The notes beneath the pieces were generated by a model, which did no database searches, was not told the origin of the DNA, and saw only the letters and a list, made by a program, of their open reading frames with translations. The position numbers were made by a program, and so were the translations under genes. From contig OU015567.1 of NCBI GenBank assembly GCA_907165135.1, positions 9,610,001 to 9,674,000 of the forward strand: DNA of 64,000 nucleotides, written 5' to 3'. The DNA is from Oikopleura dioica (taxonomy: Eukaryota > Animalia > Chordata). Below are positions 16,779-19,593 of the stretch, one piece after another (position 1 is the stretch's first letter; each line of letters opens with the position of its first letter).

Positions 16779-19593
16779 CTATTTTGAAGTTTCGTCCGCA
16801 AGTGTCACTTCATACGTAACTTGATTTCCATTGTCCCAGGCGTATAACCGTTGCTCTAGTGGATTGTACGCTAGATATGCGTTCCAACCGAACTTGTTGG
16901 AAAATGGAATCATGGGGCGTGAAGCACGGCCAGACTTGGTGTCGAAGGAGTAGTGAATATATGTCTAAGAATAATCGTAAAAATCGGATTTTCAAAAATA
17001 GCTGGAGATCAAAAAACGGACCTGTTTTTCATCGTATTTTTTCAAAACATAAAGAGTTCCGCAGAGCATGAAAGCATTCGCACTCCACTGTTTTTTCCAT
17101 CCTGTGTTGAAAGTCTCTTTGATCTCGAGCGTTTCCTCGTTCAATTTTGACAGGACTAGGTAAATAATTAGACGGTCATAATTACAGGATGCCAACCTAT
17201 ATTCCAATTGTTGGCTTCAGTTGCATAAATCACCCAGAGTCCATTTTCGTCCACGGCGAAATCGATATCCGTACTGCCGCGCCACTGATATGCTGCTTGG
17301 TTCGCGAAGCCAGCTCTAAAAGCGCAAGATTAGCACTGATCGCCTTGTTGTATCACTTCAAGTGATTGACTTGGCTAACGGATTCTTACCCTGAAAGCTC
17401 CCGGGTTGTTAGAACCTTTCTGTTCGCCCAGTCGTAACGGTACATTGTTGTGGTGTTGTATTTGGTGAAGTACAATGAACCTGAATTCATCAATTCCAAA
17501 CTTGAGTATAAATAGACTTTGGTACCTTTGTAAGCGACGTGCCCAGTACCCGCCCAGCGAAGCGGGATCAAAAAGGTGCCGGCAAAGTTATCCTAAATCA
17601 GCGTTCTTAACCCGTTAACTGGGCGCTCGGTATTAGGGGTTAACGAGCGCGAGGCCCTCTGAGGGCCTTGGACGTTTTGTCATTTTATGAAAACTAAGGC
17701 TAAGGAAACTACTTTCTACGAAATCGAGATGATTCAAAAGCGTCCGCTCTTTCATCTGAATATTGTTTTGTTGTTTTTCTAAATCATTGAAGGGTTGAAA
17801 ATTGAGGTCAAAGTTATGTCATTTTTGGCGCTTAGTTTCGAAAAATGGGAAAAAAGGGAAAAGGCGGGCCAATTCAATTACTCTTTCCCTTTTTTCCGCT
17901 GACTGAAGTTTTTCTTTCGCCTCTCCTGATCAGAATTCCATGCTTTTTTTATTCAGAATCAAAACAAGGTATTGAGAATCGATTGAATTTTTCAGAAATC
18001 TAAAAATTTTCAAGCAAAACACAGCCTCGACCATTTTATAGCGCTCAGAAGGCCAAAAGGCCCTGAGAGGGCCTCGCGCCTGTTAACGGGTTAAAAGACA
18101 TTCACCAAAGCCCCTCCAGATCTCTTTTTGATCCTGGATGAGCTGGCATCAAGTAGAAGGTGCTATCAAGCCTTTTGGAATATGACCGCTTGTCTGCGAT
18201 TAGAAAACTACGAGGTATACTTCTCAATACGGACCTTTGTGAAGTCATCGGTCGAATTGAAGAATTTGACGTTTCTTTCTTTGAAATAGTGGTCCATAAA
18301 GAATACTGTCTTGTCGGTAGAGTTACCCATGTCATTGAACCAGGCACCAAAAGGCATTCCGGATGTTTTATGCAGACTTGGAGCCGAAATCTTAAGAGAT
18401 TTTTTACTAACCTGGCACAGAATGGAGGGTAAAAAAATGTTAAACAGAGTAAATATAAGTACCTTTGAGATGTGTTTGTAACAGGCGTCCACGCCTCTTT
18501 GATGAGCTAACTCGGTCAAATTCTCGCCATTGCCAACGAAAAGATCTTCAAACAAAACATACGGACTATCCCTGAGCTTGAGCCGCGCCTTCTCCAGGAC
18601 TTTGTTCTTCATCGCATATTGGGCAAAAGTGACCACTGCTGGGCGCGTGCCATCCTGAAGACTGGGCCCAGCCCATTGAGCCAGGTCAATGTCCATGTCT
18701 TCCAACACAAGTCCGAGTTTTTTCGTCACCAGCTCACGGAACATGTCTATCAATGCTCGGCCTTCTATTTCTGGCAATCCACGTATCCGTACGTTTTTAC
18801 GGTGGAGGTACTCGTGGCTGTCGGTGATGATATTGTGATCCTCTGAGGCATATATAATTATTCTATTTTCAAGATATGAATCTACAACTAAAGTACTACA
18901 CAAAAGCTTGGCTGAGATTGTCTACAATCATTGTTATTAATTTCCCATAAAAGCACTTTCAATCAGAAGCTCAATAAGACTATAAAAATGAGCACATTTT
19001 TAGCTATTGAAATGAATGTACCTTCGACATTGAGTGCGATTTTGTTGGCGACTTCAATGAGCTGATCATATTGCTTCACAAGTTGGTTTTGGTTGTTTTC
19101 TAGCTCCTTTGTTGGATTGATCATAATGGCACTTATTATCGCGATTATTTTTCGTTAAAATAACTTGATCGAAAACGAACTCTTAGTTGTCAAAACAGGA
19201 GACTCAGCGGATTTACTGTTCATTAGAGACCAAAGTACATTACAATCGATATTATTTATTAGAATTTTACGGGTCAAGTTGATGATACGATCAAATCTTT
19301 TTCAATCTACCGTCACGCAACTTTCTCCCCGCCTATGTTACAGCTGCTTGTTTGTGCATATAAAAACGGCAAGAAAAAATATCTATCATTCCATAAAATG
19401 ATTCGAAACCTGTATTAGTTTCCCACTCCTCTTTGAGTAGAAAATAAATCTGTCAAATCCATTCCTTAGTTACTGCAGCAATCGTATGAATGACTCGTAA
19501 GTCATCCTTCTGTTCGTGAATAATAAACCCTAGAATTCCAAGTCCAATAACCAGCAAGCTAAAAATCACATTTTTCGCACGTTTTTTGAGCAT
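16779..19593 (-). CDS. Olfactomedin-domain protein with a type II membrane anchor and an internal LINE ORF1p-like coiled-coil/RRM module
   Basis: OLF motifs across exons: [83 protein letters not shown]. Exon 18463-18842 carries the ORF1-like domain. The N-terminus [25 protein letters not shown] starts at 19593; exons linking 19470 to 19130 were not resolved. Confidence 0.85.
17611..18090. mobile_element. piggyBac-like non-autonomous element (480 bp) in an olfactomedin intron
   Basis: TTAA flanks both ends (17607-10, 18091-94). Termini are CCCGTTAAC...GTTAACGGG, with a subterminal inverted GCGCGAGGCCCTCT.AGGGCC. TTAA duplication with CC termini is the piggyBac signature. Confidence 0.8.

What the first reader, a model, noticed from the sequence alone, without database searches (positions are those of the whole stretch)
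16779..19593. Olfactomedin protein with an in-frame LINE ORF1p-type coiled-coil/RRM module: candidate retrotransposon domestication
Seen: exon 18463-18842 (minus) encodes [12 protein letters not shown]...[21 protein letters not shown]...[37 protein letters not shown]. An in-frame coiled-coil-like exon ([28 protein letters not shown]) precedes it. A 51-nt GT-AG intron (18412-18462) joins it in frame to the start of a complete OLF domain ([10 protein letters not shown]...), and the frame is also open without splicing. Exon 1 reads [25 protein letters not shown], a basic tail plus TM helix. Established: non-LTR retrotransposon ORF1p (L1/Transposase_22 family, as in L1TD1) has the pattern RxNNxRIxGxPE...IERAHR...RPIIVRF...KEKVLxxAR...IxEDL after a trimeric coiled coil, and gliomedin is a type II membrane OLF protein trimerised by collagen repeats. 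Inference: an ORF1 module was exapted as an extracellular oligomerisation stalk. The conserved AHR is AQW here, consistent with loss of RNA binding. No ORF2/RT, poly-A tail or stops are visible nearby, unlike a simple insertion. I do not know of this architecture being described, but could not search for it.
Basis: partly seen in the sequence, partly recalled or inferred. Interest (0 to 1): 0.88.

Follow-up and report, generated by a model that had tools for sequence, protein, structure and literature searches.

The report
Retrotransposon ORF1p domain inside tunicate olfactomedin
A secreted or membrane-anchored olfactomedin gene of the tunicate Oikopleura dioica carries, between its membrane anchor and its olfactomedin domain, a coiled coil plus RNA-recognition-type domain that is related to the ORF1 protein of LINE retrotransposons; sea squirts have the same build, so this looks like an ancient, previously unremarked capture of a transposon protein for use outside the cell.

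Summary
The region is one expressed 10-exon gene on the minus strand (16779-19878). Its product is identical to the public Oikopleura dioica model OKI2018_I69.chr2.g6668 (448 aa).

The build is: N-terminal hydrophobic anchor, a 60-residue helical stalk, an RRM-fold module (exon 18463-18842), a short disordered linker, then a complete OLF propeller.

A profile made only from the five O. dioica copies of the module finds human and mouse LINE-1 ORF1p as the best solved structures (E 1.5e-6). The AlphaFold model matches ORF1p best (Foldseek E 2e-5; Z 11.4, against 8.6 or less for ordinary RRMs). In 1.8 billion proteins the profile finds 7,804 relatives. The nearest non-tunicate ones look like LINE ORF1 proteins, and the one checked lies beside an endonuclease/RT ORF2.

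The same architecture occurs in Ciona intestinalis, C. savignyi, Styela clava and Clavelina lepadiformis. It was not found in amphioxus or vertebrate noelin/OLFML2 proteins. It therefore dates to the tunicate ancestor or earlier and is not a recent insertion.

The parts
19844..19878 (-). Main first coding exon (ATG at 19878; MRNASGSTLAY-)
   Evidence: Joint 19844|19558 with GT-AG ends, 31 reads in X5 and 3 in X6. Used by public model P0177. The same N-terminus appears in orthologue P0153.
19465..19593 (-). Exon with the hydrophobic anchor. The internal acceptor at 19558 is the main form; the alternative start at ATG 19593 ([11 protein letters not shown]) is the minor form.
   Evidence: ORF. 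About 6 reads run through 19559-19593. [14 protein letters not shown] is the only hydrophobic segment. The AF2 helix spans residues 5-85.
19107..19464 (-). 358-nt GA-AG intron flanked by the direct repeat AAC(T/A)AAGGA
   Evidence: Joint seen in 26 reads of X5 and 5 of X6. The placement that gives GA-AG reproduces P0177.
19022..19106 (-). Coiled-coil stalk exon ([28 protein letters not shown])
   Evidence: Joints on both sides. Heptad a/d positions are 0.65 hydrophobic against 0.28 elsewhere. Predicted as a continuous helix.
18463..18842 (-). ORF1p-type module: end of the helix, RRM fold (beta-alpha-beta-beta-alpha-beta), then a disordered linker with the conserved Cys192
   Evidence: AF2 pLDDT about 90 for residues 11-100. 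PDB profile hit to LINE-1 ORF1p at E 1.5e-6. Foldseek E 2e-5 and VIA Z 11.4 to 2ykp.
18391..18462 (-). Short GT-AG intron, 72 nt.
   Evidence: The public model P0177 and the family spacing favour 72 nt. No read covers the joint.
16779..18390 (-). Six exons encoding the OLF beta-propeller: 18390-18235, 17592-17526, 17480-17390, 17315-17197, 17155-17022 and 16964-16779 (stop at 16779-16781)
   Evidence: Pfam PF02191 hits. Joint 17197|17155 and loose ends at 17022 and 17158. AF2 propeller at residues 195-443. The model equals P0177.
17607..18094 (.). MITE-like repeat inside the 642-nt intron; not part of the protein
   Evidence: Inverted repeats. At least 30 genomic copies at 72-80% identity.

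Best explanation
This is a host gene of Oikopleura dioica, public model chr2.g6668. It encodes a type II membrane or secreted olfactomedin-family glycoprotein.

The part between the membrane anchor and the OLF propeller is a 60-residue helix running straight into an RRM-fold domain. This part descends from the coiled-coil-plus-RRM region of a LINE retrotransposon ORF1 protein. The capture happened in or before the tunicate ancestor. The ORF1p C-terminal domain and ORF2 were lost, and the module has since evolved as an ordinary coding part of a small OLF gene family.

The module lies between the anchor and the disulfide-bonded OLF domain with no further hydrophobic segment, so it must sit on the luminal or extracellular side.

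Most likely it works as a rigid, self-associating stalk that spaces and multimerises the OLF heads. Collagen does this in gliomedin and colmedins, and the coiled coil does it in noelins and myocilin.

Shown here: gene structure, expression, conservation, homology to ORF1p, and distribution in tunicates.
Inferred: the direction of transfer, a single origin, the extracellular location, and the stalk/oligomerisation role. The confidence given applies to the domesticated-ORF1p-module reading as a whole; the stalk/oligomerisation role taken alone is nearer 0.5.
For: Gene and expression:
- Splice joints from RNA reads.
- The 10-exon model equals public protein P0177.
- Fixed differences to a diverged lineage are 34 synonymous against 1 non-synonymous. 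A 30-nt stretch of the module has 11 base changes but only L>I in the protein.

Homology:
- Profile A1, built only from the five O. dioica modules, has LINE-1 ORF1p 2ykp/2yko (E 1.5e-6), 2w7a (3e-5) and 2ldy (2e-4) as top PDB hits over positions 4-91.
- The Foldseek top 11 are all ORF1p, E 2e-5 to 4e-4, 21-25% identity.
- VIA-align gives Z 11.4, 10.9, 10.6 and 9.8 for ORF1p, against 8.6 or less for other RRMs.
- The profile finds 7,804 proteins at E<=1e-3. The consensus of the 150 best is QYSRRNN.RI.GIPE...DIDR.HRVG...R.IIVKF...EDLT.
- Pfam on the 150 best: Baculo_FP_2nd 10, Transposase_22 7, OLF 4.
- Relative P0016 lies 600 nt upstream of a 1,073-aa Exo_endo_phos+RVT_1 ORF.

Family and age:
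- Five loci in this genome: four with OLF and one that stops after the module.
- The module plus OLF occurs in Ciona intestinalis, C. savignyi, Styela clava and Clavelina lepadiformis.
- It was not detected in amphioxus noelin-2-like or about 100 vertebrate noelin/OLFML2 proteins, even at E<=10.
- One clade of all tunicate modules is not rejected (p-AU 0.91-0.93). The constrained tree scored 33 log-likelihood units better than the quick free tree.
- No other copy of the module, and no Transposase_22 match better than E 1.5, occurs in a genome with at least 150 RT genes.

Topology and stalk:
- AF2 shows helix 5-85, RRM 88-170, a low-confidence linker 175-190, and a propeller 195-443.
- The stalk is a constant 58-61 residues with heptad a/d hydrophobic enrichment.
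- The protein has only two cysteines, C192 and C374. They sit where OLF proteins have their conserved disulfide (the disulfide assignment is from established knowledge of myocilin and noelin).
- Homologues P0165 and P0159 have long N-terminal tails before the hydrophobic segment, so it acts as a signal anchor there.
Against: - Pfam Transposase_22 does not reach its cut-off on any copy. The window exon gives no hit, and the best paralogue gives 14.4 bits against a cut-off of 22.4.
- The same PDB profile search also gave ISWI remodellers at E 8e-5 over half the profile, so its E-values are generous.
- The window gene's module is the most divergent copy. It sits on a long branch, and the free tree did not join it to the other OLF copies.
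- The tree has only 96 columns and no root, so neither a single origin nor the direction of transfer is proven.
- Nothing here measures oligomeric state, location or ligand.
- Absence outside tunicates rests on the 120 best of 954 OLF hits and the 150 best of 7,804 module hits.
- The synonymous/non-synonymous tally is biased towards well-conserved stretches, because reads had to be at least 90% alike.
Confidence: 0.78

Rival explanations
1. The module keeps a binding role inherited from ORF1p, for nucleic acid or another polyanion such as sulfated glycans or extracellular RNA, rather than serving only as a structural stalk. This is compatible with the main explanation.
For: Basic and motif residues of the ORF1p RRM are well kept in most copies: SRSRFIRLKGIPE, DIERANRVG and PR.IVVEL. 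R90, G93, E96, R138 and K150 are invariant across 15 tunicate proteins. An OLF-less paralogue made of anchor, coil and module alone is conserved in another species, so the module has a function of its own.
Against: No ligand is known. The ORF1p C-terminal domain, which helps bind RNA in L1 (established knowledge; structures 2yko and 2ldy), is absent. The window gene replaced ERANR with LAQW.
Confidence: 0.25
2. Several independent captures: the window gene's clade, the main OLF clade and the OLF-less clade each took an ORF1 module from different LINEs.
For: In the free trees the three groups do not sit together. The window clade has a branch of length 2.0 and lands among transposon sequences.
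Against: Holding them together gives a better likelihood than the quick free search, and the AU test does not reject it (p 0.91-0.93). All share the same order of anchor, 60-residue stalk and module, and two of the three groups share the same Cys-linker-OLF continuation. The genome holds no transposon copy of this ORF1 type.
Confidence: 0.1
3. An ordinary host RRM that only resembles ORF1p by convergence or by the shared RRM fold, with no transposon ancestry.
For: RRM folds are common. Generic RRMs score Z 7-8.6 against the model. The Pfam L1 model stays below its cut-off.
Against: ORF1p structures rank first by sequence profile and by two structure methods, with the highest identity (21-28% against 5-18%). 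Thousands of ORF1-like proteins match at E down to 1e-15 with shared motifs across the whole domain. The preceding helix aligns too (ORF1p residues 142-263).
Confidence: 0.06
4. Reverse direction: a LINE lineage took its ORF1 module from a host OLF-type gene.
For: The tree is unrooted.
Against: The ORF1-type relatives number in the thousands and include human and mouse L1. The host fusion was seen only in tunicates.
Confidence: 0.04
5. A recent transposon insertion, or a gene-prediction artefact that merges a transposon fragment with an OLF gene.
For: The frame is open across the short intron, and the exon has no introns of its own.
Against: Spliced reads join the exon to the upstream coil exon. 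Changes between lineages are nearly all synonymous. Paralogues carry introns at different places inside the module. Orthologues with the same build exist in ascidians. There is no ORF2 or RT in the window.
Confidence: 0.02

Closest known systems
LINE-1 ORF1p (human 2YKO/2YKP/2W7A, and 2LDY) and the wider coiled-coil-RRM-CTD type of non-LTR retrotransposon ORF1 proteins
   Same: A long helix runs directly into a non-canonical RRM. Motifs are shared across the domain (R.N.RI.G.PE, DI.R..R.G, PR.I.V.F, EDL). These are the best sequence-profile and structural matches.
   Different: There is no C-terminal domain, no ORF2 and no repeated copies. The module lies behind a signal anchor, so it is extracellular rather than cytoplasmic, and it is fused to an OLF propeller. 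The nearest transposon relatives are a distant ORF1p type that mostly misses Pfam's L1 model.
Domesticated ORF1p genes and exons: L1TD1; Lyosin (MYL4), L1-RFX5, NUP42-L1, USP4-L1 (Kitao et al. 2025, PMC12129022)
   Same: A LINE ORF1 coiled coil plus RRM is incorporated into a host protein and kept under purifying selection.
   Different: The known cases are all vertebrate and intracellular, and in the fusion cases they are alternative first or last exons. Here the module is a constitutive internal part of a secretory-pathway protein, shared by ascidians and appendicularians, and has expanded into a small family.
Noelins (OLFM1-3), OLFML2A/B and myocilin
   Same: Their OLF domains were the closest found outside tunicates and amphioxus (40-43% identity to Clavelina P0015). 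They have the same general plan of N-terminal signal, coiled coil and OLF, and RefSeq names the ascidian proteins noelin-2/3-like.
   Different: The tunicate proteins have no recorded hit to the Noelin-1 domain (PF12308) and carry an RRM between coil and OLF. The vertebrate and amphioxus proteins showed no trace of the module.
Gliomedin and colmedins (UNC-122, COF-2)
   Same: A type II membrane anchor followed by a multimerising stalk and a C-terminal OLF domain.
   Different: Their stalk is a collagen triple helix. Here it is an alpha-helical stalk plus an RRM of transposon origin, and no collagen repeats are present.

Membership tests
LINE ORF1p (coiled coil-RRM-CTD type) | RRM domain with significant sequence similarity to ORF1p | tested here: met
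   Profile of five host modules against the PDB: 2ykp E 1.5e-6, 2w7a 3e-5, 2ldy 2e-4, over positions 4-91 of 96. Matches to ORF1-like proteins reach E about 1e-15.
LINE ORF1p (coiled coil-RRM-CTD type) | Passes the curated cut-off of Pfam PF02994 (Transposase_22) | tested here: not met
   The window exon gives no hit. The best paralogue scores 14.4 bits against a cut-off of 22.4. The whole-genome scan has a best E of 1.5.
LINE ORF1p (coiled coil-RRM-CTD type) | ORF1p-like RRM fold with the preceding helix | tested here: met
   The AF2 model has pLDDT about 90. The Foldseek top 11 are all ORF1p. VIA gives Z 11.4 to 9.8 over ORF1p residues 142-263.
LINE ORF1p (coiled coil-RRM-CTD type) | C-terminal domain after the RRM | tested here: not met
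   After EDL comes a roughly 20-residue low-confidence linker and then OLF. The OLF-less paralogue stops just after the RRM.
LINE ORF1p (coiled coil-RRM-CTD type) | Encoded upstream of an APE/RT ORF2 in a repeated element | tested here: not met
   There are five single loci, all host-gene-like with introns. None of the 150 best RT matches lies in the window.
LINE ORF1p (coiled coil-RRM-CTD type) | Trimer through the coiled coil; RNA binding and chaperone activity | not testable with these tools
   A heptad pattern is present and no RhxxhE motif was found. There is no measurement of oligomeric state or binding.
Olfactomedin (OLF, PF02191) family | Complete OLF domain | tested here: met
   Exon pieces cover profile positions 1-246. 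P0177 carries PF02191. AF2 shows a propeller at residues 195-443.
Olfactomedin (OLF, PF02191) family | Conserved cysteine pair of the OLF domain, and entry into the secretory pathway | tested here: met
   The only cysteines are C192 and C374. C192 is invariant and C374 nearly invariant in 15 homologues. There is a single N-terminal hydrophobic segment. That the pair forms a disulfide is inferred from known OLF structures.
Noelin subfamily (OLFM1-3) | N-terminal Noelin-1 domain (PF12308) | tested here: not met
   The precomputed Pfam list shows PF12308 for vertebrate noelins but only PF02191 for the tunicate proteins.
Colmedin / gliomedin | Collagen Gly-X-Y repeats between the anchor and OLF | tested here: not met
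   The translated sequence has no collagen repeats. Pfam lists OLF only.
Domesticated transposon-derived host gene | Single-copy host locus, spliced and expressed, under purifying selection, with orthologues across species | tested here: met

The most novel reading that the evidence does not exclude
A LINE ORF1p coiled coil plus RRM was captured once in the tunicate stem lineage. It replaced the N-terminal multimerisation region of a noelin-type olfactomedin. That would make it the oldest known ORF1p domestication and the first to work outside the cell, as a self-associating stalk that may still bind polyanions. An OLF-less anchor-coil-RRM protein survives beside it.
Probability: 0.5. Interest if true: 0.8.

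Novelty: new variant of a known kind. Interest (0 to 1): 0.72.

Why it matters
Known co-options of LINE ORF1p are few: L1TD1 and a handful of vertebrate fusion isoforms. All are intracellular and are thought to act on RNA.

An ORF1p module that has been a constitutive, extracellular part of an olfactomedin family since the tunicate ancestor would extend this in three ways:
- a transposon RNA-chaperone scaffold can be re-used as an extracellular building block;
- ORF1p domestication would be pushed back to the origin of a chordate subphylum;
- tunicate noelin-like proteins, one of which may be the Ciona notochord gene called olfactomedin2 (PMC11728170, link not checked), would differ in build from vertebrate noelins.

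It also gives a defined fragment to express, for asking what an ORF1p stalk does without RNA or the C-terminal domain.

Tried and rejected
- Pfam on the window exon alone gave nothing. phmmer of one paralogue against the PDB gave nothing useful.
- The search for homologous proteins on the Clavelina stalk-RRM region found only the query itself, because of the word-index limit.
- The protein-atlas search on P0015 returned only OLF-based structural neighbours and no feature hits.
- Complex prediction with three copies of Clavelina P0015 residues 24-172 gave 'no answer' (score 0.12, mark 0.32). This is not evidence for or against self-association.
- The first AU test on 145 rows did not finish. 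I repeated it on 54 rows: 15 tunicate rows plus every fourth transposon row and ten chosen ones. The long rows P0108, P0067 and P0144, and near-duplicate rows, were left out.
- The single-cell RNA run X1 laid no reads.
- I first read the exon 1-exon 2 joint as a TA-AC intron. A synonymous difference in the sequenced lineage, together with a direct repeat at both intron ends, explains this. GA-AG fits and gives the same protein.
- No dN/dS was computed on full orthologues. Only protein fragments of distant lineages were available (about 60% identity), and synonymous sites would be saturated.
- The spliced protein was not typed into any search. P0177, found later, served as its reference.
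Full report
**What is there.** The window is G000:C5:9610001-9674000 of a 64.3-Mb, 19-contig genome. A protein identical to my gene model is filed at NCBI as Oidioi.mRNA.OKI2018_I69.chr2.g6668.t1 [Oikopleura dioica], so the organism is O. dioica.

On the minus strand lies a 10-exon gene: 19878-19844, 19558-19465, 19106-19022, 18842-18463, 18390-18235, 17592-17526, 17480-17390, 17315-17197, 17155-17022 and 16964-16779. Its translation equals P0177 (448 aa) residue for residue. Eight introns are GT-AG and one is GA-AG. GA-AG is a class known in this species; that statement rests on my own knowledge of the O. dioica genome paper.

**Expression and splicing.** I laid three bulk oligo-dT RNA runs of the same species label on 16600-19900. 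The reads are 90-95% alike, so they come from a diverged lineage. They show four joints:
- 19844|19558 (31 reads in X5);
- the 358-nt intron between the anchor exon and the coil exon (26 reads in X5, 5 in X6);
- 19022|18842, which joins the coil exon to the ORF1-like exon (9 reads in X5, 1 in X6);
- 17197|17155.

Both starts keep the hydrophobic segment [14 protein letters not shown].

The joint after the ORF1-like exon was not covered. Either keeps the frame.

**Constraint.** Of the 35 fixed differences to the sequenced lineage that fall in the coding sequence, 34 are synonymous. A 30-nt loose end inside the module differs at 11 bases yet reads RKNVRIRGI against RKNVRIRGL. The tally is biased towards conserved stretches, but it shows that these exons, the module included, are read as protein.

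**The module is an ORF1p-type RRM.** Alone, the exon has no Pfam hit.

The genome holds five copies of the module: the window gene, C1:9.606 Mb, C4:13.397 Mb, C2:4.366 Mb and C2:1.166 Mb. I aligned the five exons by reference (A1). No transposon sequence went into that alignment.

Its profile finds, as the best solved structures, human LINE-1 ORF1p 2ykp/2yko (E 1.5e-6, positions 4-91 of 96), its RRM 2w7a (3e-5) and 2ldy (2e-4; a LINE-1 ORF1 RRM-CTD solution structure, which the Foldseek library titles human). The same search also lists ISWI remodellers at E about 1e-4 over half the profile. I take that as a sign that the E-values are generous.

Structure agrees. The AlphaFold model of the window exon has pLDDT about 90 for residues 11-100 and a beta-alpha-beta-beta-alpha-beta order. 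The 11 best Foldseek matches in the PDB are all ORF1p (E 2e-5 to 4e-4, 21-25% identity), ahead of ordinary RRMs. VIA-align gives Z 11.4, 10.9, 10.6 and 9.8 for ORF1p over residues 142-263, against 8.6 or less for other RRMs.

Against 1.84 billion representative proteins the profile finds 7,804 at E<=1e-3 and 305 at E<=1e-10. The consensus of the best 150 reads QYSRRNN.RI.GIPE...DIDR.HRVG...R.IIVKF.SY..K...LK...I.EDLT. Their Pfam tally is Baculo_FP_2nd 10, Transposase_22 7, OLF 4, Baculo_FP 3 and Exo_endo_phos 1. One near relative, P0016 (E 5e-16), lies 600 nt upstream of a 1,073-aa ORF with Exo_endo_phos and RVT_1. That is a LINE ORF1-ORF2 pair.

So the homology claim holds. The nearest transposon relatives are, however, a distant ORF1p type that Pfam's L1 model mostly misses, and no host copy passes that model's cut-off.

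**A family, and an old one.** Three other O. dioica loci have the same order: hydrophobic segment, helical stalk, module, Cys-containing linker, OLF. The fifth locus (C2:1.166 Mb) has the anchor, stalk and module and then a stop, about 175 aa in all. A 45%-identical orthologue of that short form sits as an uninterrupted 199-aa ORF on a JGI contig. Intron positions inside the module differ between paralogues.

Named proteins with module plus OLF are:
- Clavelina lepadiformis CAK8674263.1 / XP_076821899.1 (noelin-3-like);
- Ciona savignyi H2YGC1;
- Ciona intestinalis noelin-2-like X1;
- Styela clava noelin-3-like.

A dozen unnamed proteins from marine metagenome and Logan assemblies also carry it. 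Two module HMMs found nothing, even at E<=10, in Branchiostoma noelin-2-like or in about 100 vertebrate noelin-2 and OLFML2 proteins retrieved by the same OLF search.

The genome has at least 150 RT-bearing elements. Even so, it has no further copy of this ORF1 type.

In trees of the 96-column domain, the main OLF group (ascidians plus Oikopleura) is one starred clade. The window gene's group is another, on a long branch, and the OLF-less group is a third. Holding all three together is not rejected (p-AU 0.91-0.93), and it scored 33 log-likelihood units better than the quick free search. A single capture in or before the tunicate ancestor is therefore the simplest reading, but it is not proven.

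**How it most likely works.** The full-length model built with 15 homologues shows one helix from residue 5 to 85 running straight into the RRM (88-170), a low-confidence linker (175-190) and a propeller (195-443).

The stretch between the hydrophobic segment and the first RRM strand is 58-61 residues in the nine family members where the script could measure it. Its heptad a/d positions are 0.53-0.71 hydrophobic, against 0.14-0.28 elsewhere.

The protein has just two cysteines, at the positions of the conserved OLF pair. It has N-glycosylation sequons at 179, 221, 243 and 281.

Some homologues have 40-150 residues before the hydrophobic segment, so it is a signal anchor there. In ascidians it may be a cleaved signal peptide. 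In either case the module lies on the same side as OLF, outside the cell.

I infer that it serves as a self-associating stalk for the OLF heads, comparable to collagen in gliomedin or the coil in noelins. A retained polyanion-binding role is possible. The oligomeric state is unknown.

The window gene differs from all other copies in having D-L-A-Q-W-A-G where they have D-I-E-R-A-N-R-V-G. That change is conserved in its own orthologues. What it means for binding cannot be said.

**Compared with what is known.** The held literature has no paper that links olfactomedin with ORF1p. Kitao et al. 2025 (PMC12129022) list L1TD1, Lyosin, L1-RFX5, NUP42-L1 and USP4-L1 as the ORF1p co-options in vertebrates. 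All are intracellular, and the fusion cases are alternative terminal exons. The tunicate case is the same kind of event in a new setting.

**Scan history and compliance.** A first-stage note in this scan (s1-346150) flags the same architecture at another place in this genome, without follow-up.

Noticed in passing
window 17607-18094: The unusually long 642-nt intron holds a roughly 480-nt MITE-like element. It has terminal inverted repeats (17607-17669 and 18057-18094) and at least 30 copies at 72-80% identity across the genome.
   Followed up: partly
window 19107-19464: This GA-AG intron is flanked by a 9-10-nt direct repeat, AAC(T/A)AAGGA, at both ends. Such repeats are sometimes left by intron gain. 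The repeat, plus a synonymous difference in the sequenced lineage, shifted the aligner's joint by 4 nt.
   Followed up: partly
window 19559-19593 and 19844-19878: Two alternative first coding exons give different short cytoplasmic tails (MRNASGSTLAY, the major form, and [11 protein letters not shown], the minor form) before the same hydrophobic segment.
   Followed up: partly
L011 7710-8332 (G000:C2:1165709-1166331, minus): An OLF-less paralogue has the anchor, 50-60-residue helix and ORF1p-type module, then a stop (about 175 aa). It has a 45%-identical orthologue on JGI contig L015, which carries a second ORF 110 nt downstream on the same strand, in an operon-like arrangement.
   Followed up: partly
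proteins P0064, P0086, P0099 (representative library): These LINE ORF1-like relatives begin with a hydrophobic stretch followed by a 2A-like GD(I/V)E(A/T)(N/H)PGP motif, then coil and RRM. An ORF1p that already carried an N-terminal hydrophobic leader would be a ready-made source for an anchored module. This was not tested.
   Followed up: no
alignment A2 (150 nearest relatives): Thirteen of the nearest ORF1-like proteins hit the Pfam baculovirus FP protein domains (Baculo_FP_2nd 10, Baculo_FP 3). This suggests that the baculovirus FP protein and this ORF1p type are related.
   Followed up: no
profile positions 49-95: ISWI-type chromatin remodellers (5jxt, 6pwf, 5jxr) match the second half of the module profile at E 8e-5 to 6e-4. 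This is unexplained and probably compositional.
   Followed up: no
G000:C5:791634, C1:2730378, C4:1551688: Three further OLF loci in this genome showed no ORF1p-type module in the two own-genome searches. So four of seven OLF loci carry it.
   Followed up: no
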